Source: Octopus sinensis (Eukaryota). Taken from it: 64,000 bases of DNA. The notes beneath the pieces were generated by a model. The model did not search any database and had not been told where the DNA came from. It was given only the letters and a program-made list of their open reading frames with translations. The stretch lies in contig NC_043002.1 of assembly GCF_006345805.1 (NCBI RefSeq), forward strand, positions 109,864,001 through 109,928,000, written 5' to 3'. Made by a program: the position numbers and the translations under genes. Shown piece after piece: positions 3,709 through 62,318 of the stretch (its first letter is position 1; every line of letters begins with the position of its first letter).

Positions 3709-3790
3709 TCTCTGCTTGGAATCGAACTCGGAATCTTGAGGTTAGTAACCCGCGCTCTTAACCACCACACTACATGCCCGTTGGCTTATG
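2835..3790 (-). mobile_element. second copy of the tRNA-headed hammerhead element (ribozyme 5' half deleted)
   Basis: tRNA-like head 3705-3790 (B box GAGTTCGATTCC on minus); tail 2835-2901 keeps only CGAAACGTTGTG. Confidence 0.65.
3119..3630 (-). mobile_element. LINE-like 3'-end fragment with (AAT)n tail
   Basis: Reverse complement of 20245-20795; ends GCACTGCTCTCTCACTC(AAT)n; clade not assignable. Confidence 0.6.
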
Positions 3791-3860
3791 GCGTTATTTT
3801 TTTTTTGCCCCAAATTCTAAAAAGTGGCAGCATCTTCTGTTGTAATATTAAACGCCAGCT

Positions 3861-4090
3861 AGGTGGCGACCTGGCAGAATGGTTAACATGCTGGAAGAAA
3901 TGCTTGGCGGTATTTTGTCTGTCTTTACGTTCTGAGTTCAAATTCCGCCAAAGCCGACTTTGCCTATCATCCTTTCGGTGTCGATAAAATAAGTACAAGT
4001 TGAGCACTGGAGTCGATGTAATAGACTTAGCTCCCCCACCACCTCCCGAAATTGCTGGCCTTGTGCCAAAATTTGAAACCAATATTGAGT
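3861..4090 (+). mobile_element. SINE family B (second tail type)
   Basis: Match to family B head and body. Confidence 0.8.
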
Positions 4091-4334
4091 AACTGTGAAA
4101 AAAAAATCCTTTGAATATATTAAATTTTTAATGTTGCCAAGGATGGCCCAAGATGTTACCAGATTCAAAAGAATTTTAACCTTCGGACTAATAAGCACCG
4201 CGATAATCTTCCGGCAACACTTTTAGTGAACCATTTTATTTCATCACTAAATCCCTGAACGATATTACTTTCTTATAGAATTTTTATAGTTTCTGGGTTC
4301 ATCTTTTGATGAATAAACATCGGTTTTTATTTGA

Positions 4335-6151: not shown

Positions 6152-6533
6152 GAAGCACTCCGTCGGTTACGACGATGAGGGTTCCGGTTGATCCGAATCA
6201 ACGGAACAGCCTGCTCGTGAAATTAACGTGTAAGTGGCTGAGCACTCCACAGACACGTGTACCCTTAACGTAGTTCTCGGGGATATTCAGCGTGACACAG
6301 AGAGTGACAACGTCGGTACTTTGAAATACAGGTACAACAGAAACAGGAAGTAAGAGTGAGAGAAAGTTGTGGTGAAAGAGTACAGCAGGGATCACCACCA
6401 TCCCTGCCGGAGCCTCGTGGAGCTTTAGGTGTTTTCGCTCAATAAACACTCACAACGTCCGGTCTGGGAATCGAAACCGCGATCCTATGACCGCGAGTCC
6501 GCTGCCCTAACCACTGGGCCATTGCGCCTCCAC
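6152..6533 (-). mobile_element. tRNA-derived SINE family A (about 380 bp)
   Basis: Head TGGAGGCGCAATGGCCCAGTGGTTAGG...GGTTTCGATTCC; 12-bp TSD CATTCCTATATT at 6140 and 6534. Confidence 0.9.
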
Positions 6534-6808: not shown

Positions 6809-7189
6809 GTGGAGGCGCAATGGCCCAGTGGTTAGGGCAGCGGACTCGCGGTCGTAGGATCGCGGTTTCGATTCCCAGACCGGGCGTTGTGAGTGTTTAT
6901 TGAGCGAAAACACCTAAAAGCTCCACGAGGCTCCGGCAGGGGATGGTGGTGATCCCTGCTGTACTCTTTCACCACAACTTTCACTCTTACTTCCTGTTTC
7001 TGTTGTACCTGTATTTCAAAGGGCCGGCCTTGTCACTCTCTGTGCCACGCTGAATATCCCCGAGAACTACATTAAGGGTACACGTGTCTGTGGAATGCTC
7101 AGCCACTTACACGTTAATTTCACGAGCAGGCTGTTCTGTTGATTCGGATCAACCGGAACCCTCGTCGTCGCAACCGACGGAGTGCTTCC
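6809..7189 (+). mobile_element. SINE family A
   Basis: TSD ACATTTCGCTTT at 6797 and 7190. Confidence 0.9.
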
Positions 7190-10480: not shown

Positions 10481-10951
10481 GGGCGGCGAGCTGGCAGAAT
10501 CGTTAGCACACCGGACGAAACGCCTAGCGATATTTCGTCTACCGCTACGTTCTGAGCTCAATTTCTTATTTCTTTATTGCCCCAAGGTGATAAACACAGC
10601 AGAGGGAACAAACAAGGACAGACAAAGGGATTAAGTCGATTACATCGCCCCCAGTGCGTAACTGGTACTTATTTAATCGACCCCTAAAGGATGAAAGGCA
10701 AAGTCAACCTCGGCGGAATTTGAACTCAAAACGTAACGGCAGACGAAATACCGCTAAGCATTTCACCCGGTGTGCTAACGTTTCTGCCAGTTCGCCACCT
10801 TCTGAGCTCAATTTCTGCCGAGCTCGACTTTGCCTTTCATCCTTTCGGGGTCAATAAATTGAGTATCAGTTGTGTACAGGGGTCGATCAAATCGACTGGC
10901 CCCAACTCCCCCAAAATTTCAGGCGTCGTGCCTATAATAGAAAGGATTATT
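10481..10951. mobile_element. nested SINE B: minus copy 10567-10799 inside a plus copy
   Basis: 17-bp TSD TTCTGAGCTCAATTTCT at 10550 and 10800. Confidence 0.85.
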
Positions 10952-11117: not shown

Positions 11118-11500
11118 GGAAGCACTCCGTCGGTTACGACGACGAGGGTTCCGGTTGATCCGATCAACGGAACAGCCTGCTCGTGAAATTAACGTGTAAG
11201 TGGCTGAGCACTCCACAGACACGTGTACCCTTAACGTAGTTCTCGGGGATATTCAGCGTGACACAGAGAGTGACAAGGCCGGCCCTTTGAAATACAGGTA
11301 CAACAGAAACAGGAAGTAAGAGTGAGAGAAAGTTGTGGTGAAAGAGTACAGCAGGGATCACCACCATCCCCTGCCGGAGCCTCGTGGAGCTTTAGGTGTT
11401 TTCGCTCAATAAACACTCACAATGCCCGGTCTGGGAATCGAAACTGCGATCCTATGACCGCGAGTCCGCTGCCCTAACCACTGGGCCATTGCGCCTCCAC
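11118..11500 (-). mobile_element. SINE family A
   Basis: Full-length match to the other copies. Confidence 0.9.
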
Positions 11501-13267: not shown

Positions 13268-13642
13268 CTAGCAGTATCGCCCGGCGTTGCTCGGGTTTGT
13301 AAGGGAATATCTATAAAGCATTTTTAGAGAGTATAGCCAAAAAATAGCAAAAAAAATGGGAAAAAAAATGATGGTAAATTTTTTTTTGATAGTTAAAAAA
13401 GTCGAGTTGCGTCCCTGTGATTTGTGTTTCTGATTGTCGACCCCATGTCGAATTTACCATCTTTTTCAGAACTGGGGGAACTTTTCAAAATTTCTTTGCG
13501 TTAGTGTTTGAAGAAGTATGACATTGGGCTATGTGTGTGTCAAGTTTCATCAGAATCAGTGAAAGCCGTGGTCAGAGTGAGGGTACGAGAAACAGACACA
13601 CAGAAACACGCACAGACAAACTGCCGTTTATATATAGAGAGA
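13268..13642 (-). mobile_element. non-autonomous Helitron, second 5' type
   Basis: Same 3' hairpin and CTAG|T as the array family but a different 5' end, A|TCTCTCTATATATAAACGGCAG. Confidence 0.85.
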
Positions 13643-22624: not shown

Positions 22625-23018
22625 CTAGCAGTATCGCCTGGCGTTGCTCGGGTTTGTAAGGGAAATAACTATATAAGCATTTTTAGAGATGTAAAGTATA
22701 ATAGCCATCTCAATATGACTAACCACAAAGGGGGGGGGGTTACTGTAGCTTTTTACGTTCTGAGATTTAATAATACATTTTTAGAGAGTTACTTCCCTTA
22801 TATATGCCAAAAATGCATTAAAAATGGGAAAAATTGATGGTAATTTTTTTTTTAAATCGTAGACTCATCGTAGATGCGCGCTAATACCCAAAAGGGCTCG
22901 ATATGAATCACGACTATAAGATACCCGGTTTTGGTTAAACTGCACCGCAAAATGTGGGAATAGTTAGGAATCTAAATCGTAGGAGACAGACAGCACACAA
23001 CCTCACTTTTATATATAT
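22625..23018 (-). mobile_element. non-autonomous Helitron (same family as the 41.3-kb array)
   Basis: Plus strand A|CTAGCAGTATCGCCTGGCGTTGCTCGGG is the reverse complement of the 3' end. Internal sequence matches array units 1-3; the 5' end merges into (TA)n. Confidence 0.85.
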
Positions 23019-32687: not shown

Positions 32688-32802
32688 GAATGATTTACAA
32701 ACAACTAATTATCGAAGTGGAAAAATTATCAGAAAAGCCTCACCTATTCATTTTTCATATGTATGATATTGTACGAAGTACATTCTATTTCTGATTCTAT
32801 TA

Positions 32803-33036
32803 AGGGCGGCGAGCTGGCAGAATCGTTAGCACGCCAGGCGAAATGCTTAGCAGTATTTCGTCTGCAGTTACGTTCTGAGTTCAAATTCCGCCGAGGTCGA
32901 CTTTGCCTTTCATCCTTTCGGGGTTGAGTAAATATGTACCAATTACGCACTGAGGTCGATGTAATCGACTTAATCCCTTTGTCTGTCCTTGTTTGTCTCC
33001 TCTGTATTTAGCCCCCTGTGTGCAATAAGGAACTAT
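32803..33036 (+). mobile_element. SINE family B
   Basis: Full-length match. Confidence 0.85.
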
Positions 33037-40405: not shown

Positions 40406-41323
40406 CATACATACATACATACATACATACAAACATACATACATAAATACATACATACATACATATATATAGGATAGAAGAAAATATATACTAAAAATAG
40501 GATAGATATATATATAGGAAAAAAAATGGTCGGCAATGCCTGTGCAGAGTTTTAGGTCCAATAAGGCTTGCACAACACCTCATAGACCCTTTCCACTCTA
40601 TTGACATTATCCAGAGACAAGCCGGAGCAAGATGTCTGGTGCCAATATGAGTCGCAGGCTCAGGGATGTGGGAGCGCCGTGATCTCTAGCACAAACCAAA
40701 GATCCCCAAAATGTTCAATGCCATTCCCTGCATATCTGGTTTTATATCAGAGTGACCTTCTCCTAGAGACGTGCTTTAACAAAAGCTGAGGGGCGCCTCA
40801 CTCCCAGTGGTCTTTCAGCACGCCGGACACCACCCCGGAATTTCTACGTACCCGTGCTAACATTTATTGGATGGCCGTTGACATGGTGCATGGCTAAGTA
40901 GTTACGGTGTTACGCTAATGATCGTGATCGCAGTTTCAGTTCCTGGACGGGATGGTGTGTGGCATTCTGAGCAAAACACTTCACCTGGCGTTGCTCTGCG
41001 ATACTTGGACACCTTACATGTGGTACACCGTACACCTTTCCTGGCAATGTCGATTGGATGGACGGAGGGAGCTGATGTACAACCCTATAAACAAATCTTG
41101 TACAATTCTGCTGGGTGTTCACTAATAAATAGCTGTAGTTTTTGTTAGGCTACGGGTAATTATCATCATGTATGTATGTACCTATGTATATCATTGTTCA
41201 GTTTTATTTCAAGATGTCTTGCCAATTAAGAAAGAACCGGTTTCTAACCTAAATCCAAGGCTCCTTCACTGGAATTTCAACATCAACAACAGGGTATTTT
41301 GTATATATATATATATATATATA

Positions 41324-42870
41324 TCTTTATATATAAAAGTGAAGTTGTGTGTCTGTCTCCTACGATTTAGATTCCTAACTACTCCCACATTTTGCGGTGC
41401 AGTTTAACCAAAACCGGGTATCTTATAGTCGTGATTCATATCGAGCCCTTCTGGGTATTAGCGCGGCTCTACGATGAGTCTACGATTTAAAAAAAAATTT
41501 AACATAATTTTTCCGCATTTTTAATGCATTTTCGCTCGGTTTATATAAGGGAAGTAACTCTCTAAAAATGTATTATTAAATCTCAGAACGTAAAAAGCTA
41601 CAGTAACACCCTCCCTTTGTAGTTAGCCATATCGAGATGGCTATTATACTTTACATCTCTAAAAATGCTTATATAGTTATTTCCCTTACAAACCGAGCAA
41701 CGCCGGGCGATACTGCTAGTTATATATAAAAGTGAAGTTGTGTGTGTCTACTACGATTTAGATTCCTAACTACTCCCACATTTTGCGGTGCAGTTTAACC
41801 AAAACCGGGTATCTTATAGTCGTGATTCATATCGAGCCCTCTGGGTATTAGCGCGGCTCTACGATGAGTCTACGATTTAAAAAAAAATTTAACATAATTT
41901 TTCCGCATTTTTAATGCATTTTCGCTCGGTTTATATAAGGGAAGTAACTCTCTAAAAATGTATTATTAAATCTCAGAACGTAAAAAGCTACAGTAACACC
42001 CTCCCTTTGTAGTTAGCCATATCGAGATGGCTATTATACTTTACATCTCTAAAAATGCTTATATAGTCATTTCCCTTACAAACCCGAGCAACGCCGGGCG
42101 ATACTGCTAGTTATATATAAAAGTGAAGTTGTGTGTGTCTACTACGATTTAGATTCCTAACTACTCCCACATTTTGCGGTGCAGTTTAACCAAAACCGGG
42201 TATCTTATAGTCGTGATTCATATCGAGCCCTTCTGGGTATTAGCGCGGCTCTACGATGAGTCTACGATTTAAAAAAAAATTTAACATAATTTTTCCGCAT
42301 TTTTAATGCATTTTCGCTCGGTTTATATAAGGGAAGTAACTCTCTAAAAATGTATTATTAAATCTCAGAACGTAAAAAGCTACAGTAACACCCTCCCTTT
42401 GTAGTTAGCCATATCGAGATGGCTATTATACTTTACATCTCTAAAAATGCTTATATAGTTATTTCCCTTACAAACCCGAGCAACGCCGGGCGATACTGCT
42501 AGTTATATATAAAAGTGAAGTTGTGTGTGTCTACTACGATTTAGATTCCTAACTACTCCCACATTTTGCGGTGCAGTTTAACCAAAACCGGGTATCTTAT
42601 AGTCGTGATTCATATCGAGCCCTTCTGGGTATTAGCGCGCGTCTACGATGAGTCTACGATTTAAAAAAAATTTACCATCATTTTTTCCATTTTAATGCAT
42701 TTTTTTCGCTATTATATAAGGGAAGTAACTCTCTAAAAATGTCTACGACGAGTCAACGATTTAAAAAACAATTTACCATCATTTTTTTCCATTTTTTTGC
42801 TATAACTCTCTAAAAATCCTTACATAGTTATTTCCCTTACAAACCCGAGCAACCCCGGCGATACTGCTAG
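41324..42870 (+). mobile_element. head-to-tail array of 4 non-autonomous Helitrons (41324-41719, 41720-42110, 42111-42502, 42503-42870)
   Basis: 5' A|TCTTTATATATAAAAG; each unit ends with the GC hairpin CCCGAGCAACGCCGGG about 8 nt before CTAG|T, the canonical Helitron TC...CTRR termini at an AT target; units are about 370-395 bp. Confidence 0.9.
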
Positions 42871-43233
42871 TATTTTATAATTAAAAAACAAATTATAAGG
42901 GTGGCTTTCTATCTTGCAGTAACTAACTGTTGCTTTGCAATTTATACTTACTATGACAGACCGGAGTGATTAGAAATAGCAGTCAAAACCACAAGCCTTG
43001 TATTAAAAACGGAAGACGAAAAGCTTCCAGGATATTATTTGTATGAGGAAAACAAGGCAAACGATGGGTGGACAGCAGAAGATGTGGATGTATGTAATTA
43101 CATCTAAGATTAAATAAAAATAACGGCAGCGGACATCAAAAAATGCAGGTCTGATCCCTTCCTGGAAGGTGTTTGAAGGGATGTCAGGATATTAAGTCTG
43201 TTTTTAATTTGTTTATATCTCCCGGGTGGGAGA

Positions 43234-43421
43234 TGGGCTGAATCCTGGAAGTACTGCTATACCAGGTCAACCCGTGGCAAAGGCGGAGCAAGCCCCTAAC
43301 TCTTCGCCTCGTTCTAAAAATCAGTTTAATATCGATGGTCCCAAATAGGGACCGTATCAGATATTAAGCTGATAAGAACAGATACTACACTTTGATCTTA
43401 GCCAAAAGGCCGAGAAGCGAT
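43234..43421 (-). ncRNA. RNU2: U2 spliceosomal snRNA, full length (about 188 nt)
   Basis: Reverse complement starts ATCGCTTCTCGGCCTTTTGGCTAAGATCAAAGTGTAGTATC (canonical U2 5' end with GUAGUA branch-point recognition). Also present: stem IIa TATCAG/CTGATA, IIb GGTCCC/GGGACC, IIc ATATTAA, Sm site ATTTTTAG, stem III GGCGAAG/CTTTGCC, stem IV CCTGG-TATAGCAGTACTT-CCAGG, ending CAGCCCA. Confidence 0.97.
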
Positions 43422-43457
43422 AATTTTTACCCTAGCTTAGAAATATTATACCTATTT

Positions 43458-43473
43458 CTATTTAGTATAGTGA
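43458..43473 (-). promoter_or_regulatory. candidate snRNA proximal sequence element (PSE)
   Basis: Minus strand TCACTATACTAAATAG at -52 to -37 from the U2 start resembles the vertebrate PSE consensus TCACCNTNA(C/G)TNAAAAG. I do not know the mollusc PSE consensus. Confidence 0.4.
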
Positions 43474-43676
43474 CTGATTTATACTTACACTTATATAGCT
43501 GTATTTAATTAGTTCTTCCATATTTTGTAATATCTTTTATTTTATTTCGTAGTAGTTGTTTTATTTAATCCTTTCAATCTGAGAATTTTAATATTTCTAT
43601 TTTTTTAAAAATGATATTATTCTAAGCGTAATCTGTAATTGTGTTGATTTGATAATAAACGTGAATGAAAATTACG

Positions 43677-44073
43677 GGATATTTTCGGTTTGAACGGCAG
43701 TTTTTTCTAGCGGTGTCATATGAAATTGTCACCCATAATTATGACCCTGGTATCGATCTTATTGCATTTCAATCTATTTTAGGGTTAGAGGGGGGTATCT
43801 TTTTTTCTTCAGAAATGTAAATAAACCCAGTCTGTTTCTTAAACGAGGGACATATTCATACGGCACAGAATGTTGTTTACCTCAATAGACGTCAGTGATT
43901 GGTTGAAATTGCAGAAAAAAAAACCCAACAAATATCTTACAAACTATAGAATTTTCTCAATAAAGCCAAGAGAAAAAGATGTTTTATAACACATTCCACC
44001 AGTATAAGAAGTTTAAAATTTTTTAGTTACCTATAAATTATATTAAAAACTGCAACTCAAACCGAAAATATCC
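43677..44073. mobile_element. MITE-like element with about 30-bp imperfect TIRs
   Basis: GGATATTTTCGGTTTGAACGGCAGTTTTT at 43677 is inverted against AAAAACTGCAACTCAAACCGAAAATATCC ending at 44073. Confidence 0.65.
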
Positions 44074-44220
44074 AAAGTACGAATTACGACGGTCCGTAAT
44101 GTTCACGTGACTCTATATCTCACCAGTAAAACATTTATTACTCTTTTACTAAATTAATTATTTTTTAGGTATCATAAATCTCGTAAGTCGTATCGGAAAC
44201 ATTTTCTTGCTTTTCTGAAA

Positions 44221-44611
44221 TCTTTATATATAAAAGTGAAGTTGTGTGTCTGTCTCCTACGATTTAGTTTCCTAACTACTCCCACATTTTGCGGTGCAGT
44301 TTAACCAAAACCGGGCATCTTATAGTGGTGATTCATATCGAGCCCTTCTGGGTATTAGCGCGCGTCTACGATGAGTCTACGATTTAAAAAAAAATTTAAC
44401 ATCATTTTTTTCCATTTTAATGCATTTTTTCGCTATTATATAAGGGAAGTAACTCTCTAAAAATGTCTACGATGAGTCAACGATTTAAAAAAATATTTAC
44501 CATCATTTTTTTTCCATTTTTAATGCATTTTTTTGCTATTTTATAACTCTCTGAAAATGCTTATATAGTTATTTCCCTTACAAACCCGAGCAACGCCGGG
44601 CGATACTGCTA

Positions 44612-44612
<1 letters not shown>
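44221..44612 (+). mobile_element. non-autonomous Helitron, same family
   Basis: A|TCTTTATATATAAAAG ... CCCGAGCAACGCCGGGCGATACTGCTAG|T. Confidence 0.9.
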
Positions 44613-44660
<48 letters not shown>

Positions 44661-45026
44661 ATTGTTAAGTTTTATTTCAAGATTTCTTTCTAATAAAGAA
44701 AGAACTGGTTTCTAATCTAGATCCAAGGCTCCTTCACTGGAATTTCAACATCAGCAGGGTATTTTTGTTTGTTTGTACATATGTATGTATGTATGTATGT
44801 TTGTATGAATGTATGTATGTATGCATGCATGCATGTATGTATGCTTGTATGTATGCTTTATGTATGTATGTATGTATGTATGTATGTATGTATGTATGTA
44901 TGTATGTATGTCGTTATTCAGTTTTATTTCAAGATTTCTTGCCAATAGAGAAAGAGCCGGTTTCTAACCTAGATCCAAGGTTCCTTCATTGCAATTTGAA
45001 GATCAACAACAGGGTATTTTTGCATG

Positions 45027-45057
<31 letters not shown>

Positions 45058-45058
45058 T

Positions 45059-45089
<31 letters not shown>

Positions 45090-45457
45090 TTATGTATGTA
45101 TGTATGTATGTATGTATGTATGTTTGTATGTATGTATGCGCGCGTGTGTGTGTATGTATGTTTGTGTTGATGCGCATCATGGTTTCTTAGCGTGTTGGTA
45201 TTCATGATCGAAAATTATGGGTGGGTTGAGGCATTTTGTTCTTCAGCAAAACACTTCAATTCCCGTTGGCTCAGTCCACTCAACTGGGAAAAATTCGTAA
45301 TCCTGCGACGGACCGGCGCCCTGTCAAGGGGCGGAGGAATACACACGCCACAGAATCCGGGAAACCGGTCATATGAACCTATGAAGCTTTTTGAGATAGA
45401 TGGATAGACAGACGGACGGACAGACAGACAGACAGATAGACAGATAGACAGACAGAC

Positions 45458-46103: not shown

Positions 46104-46182
46104 AACCCTAACCCTAACCCTAACCCTAACCCGAATCCTAACCCTAACCCTAACCCTAACCTTAACCCTAACCCTAACCCTA
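46104..46182 (-). repeat. interstitial telomere-like (TTAGGG)n, about 13 units
   Basis: (CCCTAA)n on plus with two variant units. Confidence 0.9.
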
Positions 46183-47439: not shown

Positions 47440-48948
47440 CGCTGATCCGCAAAAGAAACGCGAGACATGTGTAACTGTGAAATATGTTTTAATTTCATTA
47501 TGTCAGTGATAAATTTTGATAAATCTAATGAAGTCAATTTCTTGGATTTACTTTGACCACAGTCTATGGGTCGTTGTTGTGTGTTCGGATAGTGGGCGGA
47601 TCCAGCACATCGAGGTTGTAGGGCGTGACATGTTCAATACCGTGTATGTCCTCCCTGGGTGTTCAAAACGGCCATACACTGTCGGTACATGGAGTGCATG
47701 AGGCGGTTCACAAGCGCCATTGGCCCATATCCCGAGGAAAGCTACCTCTTGTTCCACATGAGTTGTTGGCCTTGGGACCACCTGGTTCAGCTGTCTCTGG
47801 ATTTCATCCCACAGGTGTTCAATTGGGTTCAAATCCTAGCTGAGAGCCATGGTTCTGATGTTGTGCTGACGCAGGAAGTCCAAGGTGACCCTGTCCGTGT
47901 GGGAGGGAGCGTTGTCTTACTGGAACATGTGGCTATGAGGACGCGCGAAGAAGGGCATCATGTGAGGCCTTAGGATCTAGTCAACGTAGCGCTGCGCTGT
48001 GATGTCATTTTCTCTGCCTACACCAACATTTTGGAACATACGGGGCCCAATTCTCTGATTCAGGCCTATAGCACCCCAAACCATGATGATTTGACCACCG
48101 CTCGCGTCTCTCTCCATAACACATGCATCTCTGTAGCGTTCACCCCTCCTATGCCACACCTTCACTCAGACATCCGAGGTGGAAACGCAGTACCGGCTCT
48201 CGTCAGAGAAGACTATCGACCTCCATTGTTGATGCCACCAGTGTCGGGCTGCGCAGTCCACTGTCGTCTTGCTTGACGGTGGTGGGCGGTGAAGACAGGC
48301 CCTCGAATAGAACGACGGCAACGCCGGTTGCTGGTGGCCAGTCGACGCCGTACCGTGTCGTCGCTGATGGGTTGCTTTCCAGTGCCAATGGTTTCGCGAG
48401 CTTTTACACTGGCCGGTCTGAAGTGATTACGAAGGTGTTGCAGGTGGGTGAACCGGTCCTACCAGGGCGTGGTCACCCGAGGGGGGCGCCCTCTGCAGTT
48501 GGTGTTATTGTATCTCTGTTGCAGGCAATAAATTGTTCTGTCTTGGGCATTGCAAGCTTTCGCAGCAACCAGGACACGCTGCCCTGCTTGCAACCGGCCG
48601 ATAGCTTGTTCTCTCTGCACTGCTGACAATCTGCTCATTCCTGATGCGTCCAAATTACGAATTTCAGGAACGTTGTCCAAGTTGATTTTTATACCCATTA
48701 CCTCCACGAGACGCACGCGCATTTCGGTTTTCGTGACAATTGTTTGCGACTGCCAACCATGGTATTCAACGCAGCTGCGTTTTGGCACCTCGTTTGAGGG
48801 TAAGTTGAAAGGTTACCTGCAATTTGGGTTTCAGCCATAAATCAGCATGTCTTGGAATATTTACACTTACAACACCGAAATAAATTTCCGGAATTTGCCA
48901 TATAAAAATGACATTTGAAAAAAATCCCTTTTCTTTTGCGGTTCAGTG
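47440..48948 (-). mobile_element. Tc1-family DNA transposon, about 1.5 kb, decayed
   Basis: TIR-like CGCTGATCCGCAAAAGAAA (47440) versus TTTCTTTTGCGGTTCAGTG (ends 48948) enclosing transposase remnants. Confidence 0.85.
47620..48638 (-). pseudogene. Tc1 (DD34E-type) transposase pseudogene
   Basis: MSRLSAVQREQAIGRLQAG...GRPPRVTT (HTH region), TVRRRL, IMVWGAIG, NPIEHLWDE; split over several frames with stops. Confidence 0.9.
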
Positions 48949-52202: not shown

Positions 52203-52576
52203 TGGAAGCACTCCGTCGGTTACGACGACGAGGGTTCCGGTTCATCCGAATCAACGGAACAGCCTGCTCGTGAAATTAACGTGTAAGTGGCTGAGCACTC
52301 CACAGACACGTGTACCCTTAACGTAGTTCTCGGGGATATTCAGCGTGACACAGAGAGTGACAAGGCCGACCCTTTCAACAGAAACAGGAAGTAAGAGTGA
52401 GAGAAAGTTGTGGTGAAAGAGTACAGAAGGGATCACCACCATCCCCTGCCGGAGCCTCGTGGAGCTTTTAGGTGTTTTCGCTCAATAAACACTCACAACG
52501 CCCAGTCTGGGAATCGAAATCGCGATCCTATGACCGCGAGTCCGCTGCCCTAACCACTGGGCCATTGCGCCTCCAC
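52203..52576 (-). mobile_element. SINE family A
   Basis: Full-length match; partial TSD CTATGTGC. Confidence 0.9.
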
Positions 52577-53017
52577 CTATGTGCAGTACGCACTTGACTT
52601 AGGATAACAAATGGAGTGTAAACGCTCTAGAGCCATCTTCGATACTTTTCCTGTTTTTGTGAGTAGACGAGATTTGTTGCCTGACGAAATGTGACTGTAG
52701 AAATCCGAAGAGGGAGAGAGCAAATTGTAGAAATATGTGTATCATTCATGTTCTATATAAAGCTTCTTCTGGGCAAGTTAGATAATTGTAAAGATCCAGG
52801 TGTAGCTGTGTGGAGTAAAAGATTTGCAGCCAGGGGTTTTCGGGTTCGGTCCAATTGTACAGCACCTTGGGGCAAGCGTCTCCTGTAGCTTCTTCCGTCT
52901 ACCAAATTCACTCGCAATGCCTTGTCAGAGAATTTAATAGAGGGAAACTGCGTGGAGTGCCGTTGTATATAAATGTATATATGTATGTGGGCGGTATATA
53001 AATGTATATATGTATAT

Positions 53018-53257
53018 AGGCGGTGAGCTGGCAGAAACGTTAGCACGCCGGGCGAAATGCGTAGCCGTATTTCGTCTGCCGTTACGTTCCGAGTTCAAAT
53101 TCCGCCGAGGTCGACTTTGCCTTTCATTCTTTCGGGGTCGATAAATAAAGTAATAAAGTACCAGTTACGCACTGGGGTCGATGTAATCGACTTAATCCCT
53201 TTGTCTGTCCTTGTTTGTCCCCTCTATGTTTAGCCCCTTGTGGGCAGTAAAGAAATA
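53018..53257 (+). mobile_element. SINE family B
   Basis: Full-length match. Confidence 0.85.
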
Positions 53258-54129: not shown

Positions 54130-54712
54130 AAACAATGAAAGGACGATTTTGGTGATTCATTTGACAGAGGTAGTAGAGAGCCAATCCGATGATAAATCTG
54201 ACCTTGGATCTTGAAAGTTTGCATGAATCCTGGCTCATTCAAATCTCTTGTGTCTCCAAATGATGTCATCTGTAGTGCAGCGTTGCATTGTCTAATTTTG
54301 TATTGGAATACTTGGAATCTTGGTCAGTTGATGACAAGTTTCTTCAATTGCTCTGTTTAGCCTTTCCACCACTGCAGCACAGTGTAGCTGTCTTTCCAGG
54401 CCACTTTCTTGCTTTGCAAGGTATGCACTCAGTTGCCATTGCTCCAATGGAAACTCTACTGTCATCTGCATAATGAACTGCTGGATCATAATTGAAAGCT
54501 GCTTCATATAAGTTGCTTCTCTGAGCTGTTGCAACTGTTCTTCGTTCTGCAGAGGATATCTTATTCCTTGTCAGCCGTACATACATCTGTTCATCAGTTT
54601 GAGATGGTCTGGCTTTTGTAGTGCACAGTCTGCTTGTTTCTTCGTATGCTTCCCTTTCTGCAGCTGTCTCTCTTTCCCTGGATAGAGACATTCTTTTAGC
54701 TGACCTTGACAT
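54130..54712 (-). pseudogene. Helitron RepHel N-terminal fragment (frameshifted)
   Basis: Translation gives AFNYDP...IGAMATECIPCKARKWPG...CCSGGK, then KIRQCNAALQMTSFG...TFKIQGQIYHRIGSLLP, motifs typical of the Helitron helicase N-terminal region. Confidence 0.85.
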
Positions 54713-55302
54713 TGTAGACAAATTGACAAATTTGACATTTTCCATCTAGGTATACATATACAGAAAAACACGGATGCAGAAGATGGTGAACAATAAAAAT
54801 AACTGAGTAACGGAAATTATATTTCTTAATACGACGGGCAGAAAATAAATAAGAAATTTTTACGGAAATAAAGAAATTTGGCAATAAACCAATGAGCCAG
54901 TATCGAAGGAACAAGGAAAAAGCCGTTAACAACAGAAAAACACAAAACCGTTGCAAAAGTAAATAAAAAGTTATTAAGGAATTAAACTAAGTGTACGGAT
55001 TTAAGTAAAATTTTTGAAGTTACTTATGTCAGTAAATTATAAACTTATTTTTATTAGTAATTCCAAAAAAAACACACACACAAAACGTTGCAAAAGTAAA
55101 TAAGAAATTTATAGGCAAATTTAACGAAGTGTACGGATTGAAGTGAAATATATGAAGTTACTGCTGTCAATAAATTACCTATGAAATTACTTTCATCAGT
55201 AACTGTGAACTTTTTTCTGTTAGTAATATGTCTTTGTTGATTGTAAATAGCGGCGTACTTTCACTTGCTTATATATATATATATATTATATATATATATG
55301 TA

Positions 55303-61417: not shown

Positions 61418-62318
61418 CTAGCAGCATAGCCCGGTGTTGCCCGGGTATGTAAGAAATTTTGTCGATAAGCAATGCCCTTTACCTTTTTACCCTTTTTTGT
61501 ACTCATTGAACCGTTATTTTGTAAAATGAAGCCTAAAAGGCATTAAGGCATGAAGAAAATCTATGACAGTCAAAGTGCATTTTCTGGTTTTGTTTAGCAC
61601 ACTCAACCCAGTTCTGCGGGATCAGTGTTGCGACGGGAACGCATGGGTTGGGAGTTTGACAGGCAGAGGTGATAAGGTTGCACATGCCGGCCCTTTTGAT
61701 ACCGCCCCCTCGAACCCAAGTTGAGTTCGGACCACAGCTAAGCCCTACCTAATCTTAACTTAAGTCTAGCGAAAGGGGGCTCGGGAGCCTCAAGTAGGCA
61801 ACGATTAATCCCGATCTAGTCCTTCCCCTCTAGGGAACGAAGGCGCCTTCGCTGTGAATTTCAAAAAAATTCCTGTTAATTTGTTAAAGATATTGTCGGA
61901 AATATGTCATCTTGAATTTGAAAGCGATTTCCCAAAATGGTATGATTTTATCGATTTTTTTCTGATGGTAAAGTATTGCATGGAAAACTAACGTCAGAAT
62001 TAAGTTCCTTAGGGTAACATTAAGCTTCATCATGAATTTGGTGAAATTCGATTGCAAGTTGCGAAAACTACAACGGAAAATGTGTTGCATATGATAAGCT
62101 TAGATTCTCGACCCCATGTCGAATTTATCGATTTTTTCAGAACTGGGGAGACTTTTCAAAATTTTCGCTGCGTTAGTTTTGAATTATGACTTGGGCTATG
62201 GTGTGTCAAGTTTCATCAGAATCGGTTGAAAGCCGTGGTCAGGGTGAGGTTGCAATCTGACAGACACACAGACAGACAGACACACAGACAGACAAACTGC
62301 CTTTTATATATAGAGAGA
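61418..62318 (-). mobile_element. 900-bp non-autonomous Helitron with extra internal segment
   Basis: 5' A|TCTCTCTATATATAAAAGGCAG and about 210 bp shared with the 13268 copy; 3' CCCGGGCAACACCGGGCTATGCTGCTAG|T. Confidence 0.8.

What the first reader, a model, noticed from the sequence alone, without database searches (positions are those of the whole stretch)
41324..44612. Composite Helitron that appears to have captured a complete U2 snRNA gene
Seen: the block starts A|TC in a (TA)n tract and ends CTAG|T in a (TA)n tract, and both tracts lie between adjacent copies of the same 110-bp repeat (41191 and 44659), so the 3.29 kb looks like one insertion at one AT target. Between two same-orientation Helitrons of the same variant (42503-42870 and 44221-44612) lies about 1.35 kb of cargo: a full-length U2 with all stems intact, its upstream region and a MITE. 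The terminator just before the cargo is damaged (CCCGAGCAACCCCGGCG instead of CCCGAGCAACGCCGGGCG) while the distal one is intact. Established: Helitrons transduce 3' flanking DNA by reading through a weak terminator. Inference: a rolling-circle element is dispersing promoter-containing spliceosomal snRNA genes by a DNA route, unlike retroposed, promoterless snRNA pseudogenes.
Basis: partly seen in the sequence, partly recalled or inferred. Interest (0 to 1): 0.9.

Follow-up and report, generated by a model that had tools for sequence, protein, structure and literature searches.

The report
U2 snRNA gene bracketed by Helitrons
A complete U2 spliceosomal RNA gene with its flanking DNA sits exactly between the ends of small rolling-circle transposons (Helitrons), and the whole 3.3-kb block interrupts one (TA)n microsatellite, so the gene was probably copied here as DNA by the transposons; only this one copy could be examined, so ongoing spread is unproven.

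Summary
Rfam finds one full-length U2 (43228-43421, minus strand, 184.5 bits). It lies in 1,350 bp of window-unique DNA bounded to the base by a Helitron 3' end (CTAG|T, 42870) and a Helitron 5' end (A|TC, 44221). The block 41324-44612 splits a (TA)n tract between neighbouring 110-bp repeats.

- There are five Helitron units, four of them in a head-to-tail array.
- Units 2 and 3 are recent unequal-crossover products, so the ancestral structure was A-unit + B'-unit + cargo + B-unit.
- Unit 4 is a chimera and lacks the 5' TC, so it could not have started transposition.
- Hairpin damage is common (3 of 7 copies), and two intact hairpins lie upstream of the cargo. The "weak terminator" step is therefore not specifically supported, and published Helraiser data show it is not needed.

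Best reading (about 0.5): one composite Helitron insertion that bypassed internal terminators. Rivals are gene conversion between Helitron copies, independent insertions around a resident gene, and misassembly.

"Dispersing U2 genes" is untested. No cephalopod sequence could be reached with these tools, and all external searches returned nothing. I rate it a new example of a known process, of moderate interest.

The parts
41191..41300 (+). 110-bp repeat, copy 1 (left flank of the insertion site)
   Evidence: blastn: matches 44659-44765 and 44911-45020 at 89% identity.
41302..41323 (.). (TA)11, left half of the split target microsatellite
41324..41719 (+). Helitron unit 1. It has a complete 5' end (A|TCTTTATATATAAAAG) and an 'A' body. 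Its hairpin has lost one C.
   Evidence: (-3.1 kcal/mol)
41720..42110 (+). Helitron unit 2. Its 5' end lacks TCT (junction CTAG/TTATATAT). It combines the unit-4 head with the unit-1 body. Hairpin intact.
   Evidence: 99-99.5% identical to units 1 and 3.
42111..42502 (+). Helitron unit 3, same make-up as unit 2. Hairpin intact.
42503..42870 (+). Helitron unit 4 (B'). It is a chimera. Its first ~140 nt are 139/139 identical to unit 3. The rest follows the 'B' variant (100/104 to unit 5, against 87/105 to unit 3). It has no 5' TC and ends CTAG|T against the cargo.
42844..42860 (+). Damaged 3' subterminal hairpin of unit 4 (CCCGAGCAACCCCGGCG)
   Evidence: -1.1 kcal/mol, against -4.5 for the intact form
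42871..44220 (.). Cargo: 1,350 bp, unique in the window and non-coding. It begins with T and ends with A, as expected if two Helitrons once inserted at A|T sites of a donor locus.
   Evidence: one search found no protein homologues for its open frames.
43228..43421 (-). Full-length U2 snRNA gene
   Evidence: RF00004, 184.5 bits, model 1-192. GUAGUA at nt 34, 5' end canonical, Sm-like AUUUUUAG at nt 101.
43197..43205 (-). 3'-box-like motif AAAAACAGA, 23-31 nt downstream of the U2 3' end
   Evidence: It matches the vertebrate consensus AAARNNAGA, which I recall from memory; function is inferred.
43445..43450 (-). TATAAT at -29 to -24 upstream of U2; possible promoter element
   Evidence: Function is inferred only; there are no comparators.
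43677..44073 (.). 397-bp MITE-like insertion 256 bp upstream of U2. It has 29-nt terminal inverted repeats and an 8-bp target duplication (43669-43676 AAATTACG, 44074-44081 AAAGTACG), which is hAT-like.
44221..44612 (+). Helitron unit 5 ('B' variant). Complete 5' end A|TC, intact hairpin at 44585-44602, ends CTAG|T.
44613..44657 (.). (TA)22, right half of the split target microsatellite
   Evidence: (100% matches)
44659..44765 (+). 110-bp repeat, copy 2 (right flank). Copy 3 lies at 44911-45020 after (TATG)n.
22625..23017 (-). Independent dispersed copy of the same Helitron family ('A' type, 92.7% to unit 3). Its 5' end lies in a (TA)n tract and it ends CTAG|T. The hairpin carries a G>A change.
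13268..13387 (-). Independent 5'-truncated copy ('B' type 3' part) ending CTAG|T

Best explanation
What it is. 41324-44612 is a composite of non-autonomous Helitrons (a family of about 392 bp) carrying 1.35 kb of host DNA. That DNA holds a complete U2 snRNA gene with 799 bp of upstream and 357 bp of downstream sequence.

Most likely history:
1. At a donor locus, two same-orientation 'B' Helitrons had inserted at A|T sites on either side of a U2 gene.
2. Rolling-circle transposition began at a complete left end, the one now at 41324. It failed to stop at the internal 3' hairpin terminators and ended at the 3' end of the distal Helitron, now at 44612.
3. The whole block was pasted between an A and a T of a (TA)n microsatellite lying between two 110-bp repeats.
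4. Later, unequal crossing-over between unit 1 and unit 4 created units 2 and 3. This turned an A+B' dimer into the present four-unit array.
5. A hAT-like MITE entered the U2 upstream region either before or after the move.

Shown directly: the anatomy, the termini, the reconstructed empty site, and the chimeric pattern of the units.

Inferred: that the block moved as one piece, that Helitron machinery rather than recombination moved it, and that the U2 copy is transcribed.
For: Helitron identity:
- All 7 copies end in CTAG.
- 5 of 5 independent 3' flanks are T, and the 2 clear 5' flanks are A. The chance of five T flanks is about 0.003 at this base composition.
- Units 1 and 5 share 5' TCTTTATATAT... 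after unrelated flanks.
- A G+C hairpin ends 12 nt from the 3' end. A second family at 61418-61454 keeps the same layout with a better stem (-6.9 kcal/mol, z -2.55).

Composite block:
- The cargo abuts CTAG| at 42870 and |TC at 44221 to the base, with no (TA)n remnant on the cargo side.
- The cargo starts with T and ends with A.
- The outer flanks join into one (TA)~33 spacer between neighbouring 110-bp repeats.
- Both cargo-flanking units are 'B' type and in the same orientation.

DNA copy rather than retrocopy:
- The U2 is full length, keeps upstream and downstream DNA, has a 3'-box-like motif and a TATAAT at -29, and has no A-tail.

Mechanism precedent:
- In Helraiser the left end is essential and the hairpin acts as terminator.
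- Read-through occurs in about 11.7% of events with an intact hairpin and in at least 36% without it (PMC4778049).

Later array growth:
- Units 2 and 3 share the unit-4 head (139/139) and the unit-1 body (105/105 and 84/84).
Against: - Only one copy of the cargo exists in the 64 kb. No second copy, donor locus or empty allele could be examined.
- A single event starting at 41324 must have bypassed two terminators. The unit-1-type terminator was probably intact then, because its descendants (units 2 and 3) are intact.
- Unit 4 lacks the 5' TC, and its chimeric make-up is equally what a gene-conversion tract would leave.
- (TA)n tracts are very common here: 56 perfect tracts of at least 8 units in 64 kb. 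Landing next to (TA)n is therefore expected for any Helitron.
- The intact hairpin is weak (-4.5 kcal/mol, z -1.05).
- The organism was not confirmed with tools.
Confidence: 0.5

Rival explanations
1. Gene conversion or ectopic recombination driven by Helitron homology. An A-type Helitron array already sat in the (TA)n tract. A break in its last unit was repaired from a B-U2-B locus elsewhere, copying B body, cargo and B head/body into the array. On this view the Helitrons served only as homology arms, not as the transposition machinery.
For: - Unit 4 switches from 139/139 identity with unit 3 to B-type sequence near alignment column 155. That is what the left edge of a conversion tract would look like.
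- The last 66 nt of unit 5 carry no A/B diagnostic sites, so a right-hand switch there would be invisible.
- The units are 84-91% identical over about 390 bp.
Against: - The chimeric pattern is explained just as well by unequal crossing-over producing units 2 and 3 from units 1 and 4, and that process is needed for the array in any case.
- 84-91% identity is a poor substrate for homologous repair.
- Unit 5 keeps a complete, canonical 5' end.
- Like the main explanation, it still requires a donor in which Helitrons bracket U2.
Confidence: 0.2
2. Resident U2 gene with independent Helitron insertions. The U2 segment is native DNA lying between two separate (TA)n tracts. One Helitron, later amplified in tandem, landed on its left and another landed on its right.
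For: - (TA)n tracts occur about once per 1.1 kb in this window, and this family lands in them; the copy at 22625-23017 also abuts a (TA)n tract.
- Helitron density is high: three loci of this family in 64 kb, and 43,735-121,101 Helitron copies reported in octopus genomes (PMC6279123).
Against: - Both insertions would have to sit at the innermost A|T of their tracts, leaving at most one TA unit on the cargo side. The chance is roughly (2/12)x(1/23), about 0.7%, if sites within a tract are used evenly (my estimate).
- They would also have to share orientation and the B subtype.
- The U2 segment would itself have to sit inside the microsatellite spacer of a three-copy local array of the 110-bp repeat.
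Confidence: 0.12
3. Assembly artefact. Repeated 392-bp Helitron units caused a false join that placed a U2 contig inside a Helitron array.
For: The region is rich in repeats and microsatellites, and units 1-3 are 99-99.5% identical. No read data could be examined.
Against: - There are no N runs in the window.
- Units 4 and 5, which flank the cargo, differ from each other by about 9% and from units 1-3 by about 16%, so the two cargo junctions are unique sequence.
- Both junctions fall exactly at canonical Helitron termini. A collapse or false join inside a repeat would not be expected to do that.
Confidence: 0.07

Closest known systems
Helitron 3' transduction / read-through gene capture (Helraiser experiments and HelibatN3 NUBPL promoter capture; maize gene-fragment Helitrons)
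   Same: - 5' TC and 3' CTAG ends, a subterminal hairpin about 12 nt from the end, and A|T targets without duplication.
- Host DNA lies between an upstream 3' end and a downstream terminator.
- Regulatory DNA is carried along (PMC4778049).
   Different: - The cargo here is a complete small non-coding RNA gene with both flanks, not a fragment or promoter of a protein-coding gene.
- The downstream terminator is a second full Helitron of the same subfamily rather than a new 3' end formed de novo.
- Only one copy was seen, so mobility of the composite is not shown.
- Searches of the paper library found no report of a Helitron carrying an snRNA gene.
Tandem arrays and satellite-like amplification of Helitron/Helentron-derived elements (oyster, Drosophila DINE-TR1), and the 'double insertion then unequal exchange' route to tandem repeats
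   Same: Four head-to-tail units share an identical derived junction, and the intermediate units are recombinants of the outer two. The general link between Helitrons and tandem repeats is reviewed in PMC10048060 and PMC8268682.
   Different: Here whole elements are repeated, not internal satellite monomers, and the array is short (four units).
Retroposed snRNA pseudogenes and SINEU (SINEs with U1/U2-derived heads, Kojima 2015, cited in PMC4758252)
   Same: Both are dispersed copies of U2-related sequence. One 'SINE/U' family (369,490 bp; 19 recent copies averaging about 734 bp) is listed for Octopus vulgaris (PMC13282606).
   Different: - This copy is full length and carries non-U2 DNA upstream and downstream, including a 3'-box-like motif.
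- It has no A-rich or LINE-type tail and no target duplication.
- Its boundaries are Helitron termini.
- Whether the published SINE/U family is related could not be checked, because its sequence is not held here.
Dada DNA transposons that target multicopy small-RNA genes (PMC3706591)
   Same: A DNA transposon physically associated with an snRNA gene.
   Different: Dada inserts inside U1/U6/tRNA genes at a fixed position. Here the U2 is uninterrupted and lies between transposon copies as cargo.

Membership tests
Helitron (non-autonomous) | 5' terminus TC | tested here: met
   Units 1 and 5 both start TCTTTATATATAAAAG after unrelated flanks. In the third independent copy (22625-23017) the 5' end is merged into a (TA)n tract and no TC can be seen. 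Units 2-4 lack TCT.
Helitron (non-autonomous) | 3' terminus CTRR | tested here: met
   CTAG in 7 of 7 copies, and also in a second family at 61418.
Helitron (non-autonomous) | G+C-rich hairpin about 10-12 nt upstream of the 3' end | tested here: met
   The stem CCCG(A)G/CCGGG ends 12 nt from the terminus. Folding gives -4.5 kcal/mol but z is only -1.05. The related family keeps the same position with -6.9 kcal/mol and z -2.55.
Helitron (non-autonomous) | Insertion between host A and T, with no target-site duplication and no terminal inverted repeats | tested here: met
   5 of 5 3' flanks are T and the clear 5' flanks are A. The flanks of 41324-44612 join into an uninterrupted (TA)n. By inspection the 5' and 3' ends are not complementary.
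Helitron (non-autonomous) | Autonomous RepHel-encoding partner sharing the termini | not testable with these tools
   No genome of the organism was reachable. The ORF at 54344-54745(-) has a CxxC...CCxxGK motif reminiscent of RepHel N-termini, but it had no Pfam hit and no database homologue.
Helitron-captured / transduced gene (composite element) | Cargo bounded exactly by Helitron termini in one orientation | tested here: met
   CTAG|T at 42870/42871 and A|TC at 44220/44221.
Helitron-captured / transduced gene (composite element) | Empty target site (allele or orthologue) showing one insertion | tested here: inconclusive
   There is only an in-window reconstruction: (TA)11 + (TA)22 between neighbouring 110-bp repeats. 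No real empty site was available.
Helitron-captured / transduced gene (composite element) | Two or more copies of the same composite at different loci, or an identified donor locus | not testable with these tools
   The cargo is single-copy in the window. Exact-protein look-ups, the homologue search and the DNA pattern scans all returned nothing.
Functional U2 snRNA gene | Full-length match to the U2 covariance model with conserved 5' end and branch-point-binding GUAGUA | tested here: met
   184.5 bits, model 1-192. GUAGUA at nt 34 and canonical nt 1-29.
Functional U2 snRNA gene | Canonical Sm site (RAU4-6GR) | tested here: inconclusive
   The site reads GAUUUUUAG, with A where G is usual (the consensus is from memory and from the Rfam consensus line). 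No other U2 from this lineage was available for comparison.
Functional U2 snRNA gene | Upstream promoter (PSE) and downstream 3' box; evidence of expression | tested here: inconclusive
   TATAAT at -29 and AAAAACAGA at +23 to +31. The PSE cannot be recognised without comparators, and no expression data were available.
Retroposed snRNA pseudogene / SINEU | Copy limited to transcript sequence, often 3'-truncated, with an A-rich or LINE-derived tail and target duplication | tested here: not met
   The U2 is full length. The downstream sequence ACCCGGGAGATATAAAC... has no tail. Unrelated DNA lies on both sides up to the Helitron termini.
hAT-type MITE (the 397-bp insert) | Terminal inverted repeats plus an 8-bp target duplication; multiple copies | tested here: inconclusive
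   The terminal inverted repeats are 29 nt at 90% complementarity, and the target duplication matches at 7 of 8 positions. The window holds no second copy.

The most novel reading that the evidence does not exclude
Composite Helitrons are a real, repeated vehicle for intact, promoter-bearing U2 (and perhaps other U) snRNA genes in octopus genomes. On this reading, part of the dispersed snRNA gene family, possibly including the ~0.37-Mb family annotated as 'SINE/U' in Octopus vulgaris, arose by rolling-circle DNA transposition rather than retroposition or tandem duplication, and some transposed copies are expressed as U2 variants.
Probability: 0.15. Interest if true: 0.7.

Novelty: new member of a known kind. 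Interest (0 to 1): 0.42.

Why it matters
Helitrons are known to pick up gene fragments and promoters. Capture of a whole, potentially working gene is rare in animals, and I found no described case of a spliceosomal snRNA gene as cargo.

The cytogenetic literature often guesses that transposons scatter U2, 5S and histone gene clusters, but without sequence-level evidence. A confirmed Helitron-borne U2 cassette would supply a concrete DNA-level mechanism for that scatter. It would also be a source of U2 sequence variants, and a warning that repeat annotators may file such cassettes as "SINE/U".

As it stands, this is one well-formed locus that makes the idea directly testable with a genome-wide search.

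Tried and rejected
External copies (all attempts failed):
1. Exact-product look-ups of six window ORFs found nothing on record. These covered ORFs inside U2, across the U2 promoter, across the cargo/unit-5 junction, across the repeat/unit-1 junction, inside the Helitron, and a 133-aa ORF.
2. One homologue search used nine concatenated stop-to-stop frames from the cargo and both junctions. It collected 2,272 word candidates, and none scored E <= 0.001.
3. Exact DNA scans with the Helitron 3' motif (25 nt) and 5' motif (27 nt) gave 0 matches. The 3' motif was run in metagenome contigs and genome contigs, and the 5' motif in metagenome contigs, genome contigs and viral contigs.
4. A homologue search with the RepHel-like ORF gave no hits. 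The third allowed search was not spent, because two had shown that the collection does not cover this genome.

Ideas rejected:
- The mir-297, mir-1277 and similar matches at 44.6-45.2 kb are microsatellite artefacts far below their gathering scores.
- There is no tRNA-like head in or near the block, so nothing suggests a tRNA-type SINE.
- U2 as a retrocopy or SINEU was rejected on structure (see the membership test).
- I rejected the reading that the damaged hairpin caused the capture. Lesions occur in 3 of 7 copies and cannot be dated.
- Unit 4 as the initiating Helitron was rejected because it lacks the 5' TC.
- An A-type Helitron inserting inside the first bases of unit 4 was rejected, because it would leave a duplicated TCTTTA that is not seen.

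Literature:
- Eight searches of the paper library found Helitrons documented in octopus genomes.
- They also found Helitron-like stretches reported in histone H3 probes of manatees.
- None reported an snRNA gene carried by a Helitron.
Full report
OBSERVATION

The described features are all present. Rfam finds a single family above threshold in the 64 kb. It is a full-length U2 snRNA on the minus strand at 43228-43421 (184.5 bits against a gathering score of 46, model positions 1-192, E 3e-39). The 5' 29 nt are canonical, the branch-point-binding GUAGUA is at nt 34, and the Sm-like site reads AUUUUUAG.

A repeat of about 392 bp occurs seven times in the window (blastn, alignment, nhmmer):
- five copies on the plus strand: 41324-41719, 41720-42110, 42111-42502, 42503-42870 and 44221-44612;
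- one full copy on the minus strand at 22625-23017;
- one 3' fragment at 13268-13387.

The 1,350 bp between 42870 and 44221 is unique in the window apart from the inverted repeats of an internal MITE.

The 110-bp repeat has exactly three copies (41191, 44659, 44911; 89% identity). Each is followed by a microsatellite.

IS THE REPEAT A HELITRON?

By every terminal criterion that could be tested, yes.
- All seven copies end GATACTGCTAG.
- The five independent 3' flanks are all T, which has a chance of about 0.003 at this base composition. The clear 5' flanks are A.
- Units 1 and 5 share the 5' end TCTTTATATATAAAAG after unrelated flanks.
- A G+C stem, CCCG(A)G/CCGGG, ends 12 nt before the terminus.

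On its own the hairpin is weak (-4.5 kcal/mol, z -1.05). A second Helitron family, whose 3' end lies at 61418-61454 on the minus strand, keeps the same layout with a better stem (-6.9 kcal/mol, z -2.55).

Two subtypes exist as dispersed copies. The 'A' body is found in units 1-3 and the copy at 22625. The 'B' body, which carries an internal ~100-bp duplication, is found in units 4 and 5 and the fragment at 13268.

No autonomous partner could be identified. The organism was not confirmed by any tool. For context, Helitrons are documented at 0.7-3.7% of octopus genomes (PMC6279123; PMC13282606).

ANATOMY BEYOND THE FINDING

The block holds five units, not two. Units 2-4 share one derived junction, CTAG/TTATATAT, in which the 5' TCT is missing. 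That junction was therefore formed once and then copied.

Site-by-site comparison gives the following.
- Unit 4 is 139/139 identical to unit 3 over alignment columns 12-155. It then switches to B type: 100/104 to unit 5 against 87/105 to unit 3.
- Units 2 and 3 have the unit-4 head and the unit-1 body (105/105 and 84/84).

This is the pattern expected if units 2 and 3 are unequal-crossover products of an ancestral dimer, unit 1 (A) plus unit 4 (B'). Their 99-99.5% identity says the amplification is recent. The ancestral structure was therefore A + B' + cargo + B.

THE CARGO

The U2 gene carries 799 bp of upstream and 357 bp of downstream DNA.
- A TATAAT lies at -29.
- AAAAACAGA lies 23-31 nt past the 3' end. 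It fits the vertebrate 3'-box core AAARNNAGA, a consensus I recall from memory.
- No PSE can be called without other snRNA genes from this lineage.

A 397-bp MITE-like element (43677-44073) sits 256 bp upstream of U2. It has 29-nt inverted repeats and an 8-bp duplication, AAATTACG/AAAGTACG, which is hAT-like. Without it the cargo is 945 bp. None of the cargo's open frames has a protein homologue.

The copy is not a retrocopy. It is full length, has no A-rich tail and is embedded in non-U2 DNA.

ONE INSERTION?

Removing 41324-44612 joins (TA)11 to (TA)22. The result is a 69-bp microsatellite spacer between neighbouring 110-bp repeats, comparable to the 145-bp (TATG)n spacer between copies 2 and 3.

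The cargo abuts the Helitron termini to the base, with at most one TA unit on the cargo side. It begins with T and ends with A. That is what two canonical A|T insertions at a donor locus would leave.

Suppose instead that the U2 segment were resident and the Helitrons came independently. Both would then have had to use the innermost A|T of their (TA)n tracts. I estimate that at roughly 0.7% if sites within a tract are used evenly. They would also have to share orientation and subtype.

This argument is tempered by how common (TA)n is here: 56 perfect tracts of at least 8 units in 64 kb. The family also plainly favours such tracts.

MECHANISM

In the Helraiser system the left end is essential and the 3' hairpin acts as terminator. 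Flanking DNA is transduced in about 11.7% of events with an intact hairpin and in at least 36% without it (PMC4778049).

Applied here, unit 4 has no 5' TC, so a single event at this site must have begun at 41324 and ended at 44612. It would have bypassed the unit-1-type terminator and the unit-4 terminator.

- Hairpin lesions occur in 3 of 7 copies: unit 4 at -1.1, unit 1 at -3.1 and the copy at 22625 at -2.7 kcal/mol.
- The lesions cannot be dated.
- Units 2 and 3 carry intact hairpins inherited from the unit-1 lineage.
- Intact terminators are bypassed often enough anyway.

RIVALS

(i) Gene conversion from a B-U2-B donor into a pre-existing A-type array would give the same structure and would also explain the chimeric unit 4. 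Confidence 0.2.

(ii) A resident U2 gene with independent insertions. Confidence 0.12.

(iii) Misassembly. Confidence 0.07. Against it, both junctions lie in unique sequence and fall exactly at canonical termini, and there are no Ns.

Explanations (i) and the preferred one both imply a donor locus where Helitrons bracket U2.

WHAT COULD NOT BE DONE

The decisive test is a search for other copies with the same boundaries, an empty site, or a donor. It needs cephalopod genome sequence, and none was reachable:
- six exact-product look-ups;
- a homologue search with concatenated cargo and junction frames;
- five DNA pattern scans;
- a second homologue search.

All returned nothing.

The literature searches found no report of a Helitron carrying an snRNA gene. 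One lead emerged. The Octopus vulgaris repeat annotation lists a single 'SINE/U' family of 369,490 bp, with 19 recent copies averaging about 734 bp (PMC13282606). That is a size closer to a gene-plus-flanks cassette than to a SINE. Its sequence is not held here, so the link is speculation.

VERDICT

- Observation: confirmed.
- Interpretation: partly supported.
- The locus is a well-formed Helitron-U2-Helitron composite sitting in one reconstructed A|T target. It is most likely a DNA-level duplication of a promoter-bearing U2 gene mediated by Helitrons. Confidence is about 0.5 for transposition with terminator bypass, and about 0.7 for Helitron-mediated duplication of either kind.
- "Dispersing" and "functional" remain untested.
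- This is a new cargo example of a known process.
- Interest: 0.42.

Noticed in passing
window 61418-61454 (-), body extending to about 61900: This is the 3' end of a second, related Helitron family: ...ACCCGGGCAACACCGGGCTATGCTGCTAG|T. It has a stronger hairpin (-6.9 kcal/mol, z -2.55) at the same distance from the terminus. Its 5' end and content were not mapped.
   Followed up: partly
window 54150-54745 (-): A 133-aa ORF ends ...ECIPCKARKWPGKTATLCCSGGKAKQSN, and the next frame reads ...FKIQGQIYHRIGSLLP. From memory this resembles the zinc-finger-like N-terminal region of Helitron RepHel proteins. It is truncated by a (TA)n/(TG)n tract at about 54060. It had no Pfam hit and no database homologue, so the resemblance is unverified.
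   Followed up: partly
window 46104-46182: An interstitial telomere-type repeat, (AACCCT)13 (that is, TTAGGG on the other strand) at 91% matches, lies 1.5 kb downstream of the block.
   Followed up: no
window 47550-48812 (-): Degenerate frames carry Tc1/mariner-like motifs (DLNPIEHLWDE...VFSDESR...). The only support is a sub-threshold HTH_23 match (E 2e-4). This is probably a decayed Tc1-like transposase.
   Followed up: partly
window 6201-6449, 6918-7139, 11167-11391, 52254-52481; and 1340-1630, 3789-4127, 10594-10854, 32747-33007, 52937-53164: Two other high-copy interspersed repeat families show up as recurring translated frames (...LFHHNFLSLLLPVSVVPVFQ..., and ...RKDERQSRPRRNLNSERNGRRNTAKHF...). 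They were not classified.
   Followed up: no
window 41191-45140: There is a local three-copy array of a 110-bp unit, each copy followed by a different microsatellite: (TA)n, (TATG)n and (ATGT)n. The origin of the unit is unknown. It occurs nowhere else in the 64 kb.
   Followed up: partly
window 43224-43244 (-): A 7-bp inverted repeat, ATCTCCC-ACCC-GGGAGAT, spans the annotated U2 3' end and the first downstream bases. Any role in 3'-end formation is unknown.
   Followed up: no
whole window: Microsatellite density is extreme: 56 perfect (TA)>=8 tracts (1,534 bp), plus many (ATGT)n, (AC)n and (AGAC)n tracts. These generate spurious long ORFs and sub-threshold miRNA-family matches.
   Followed up: yes
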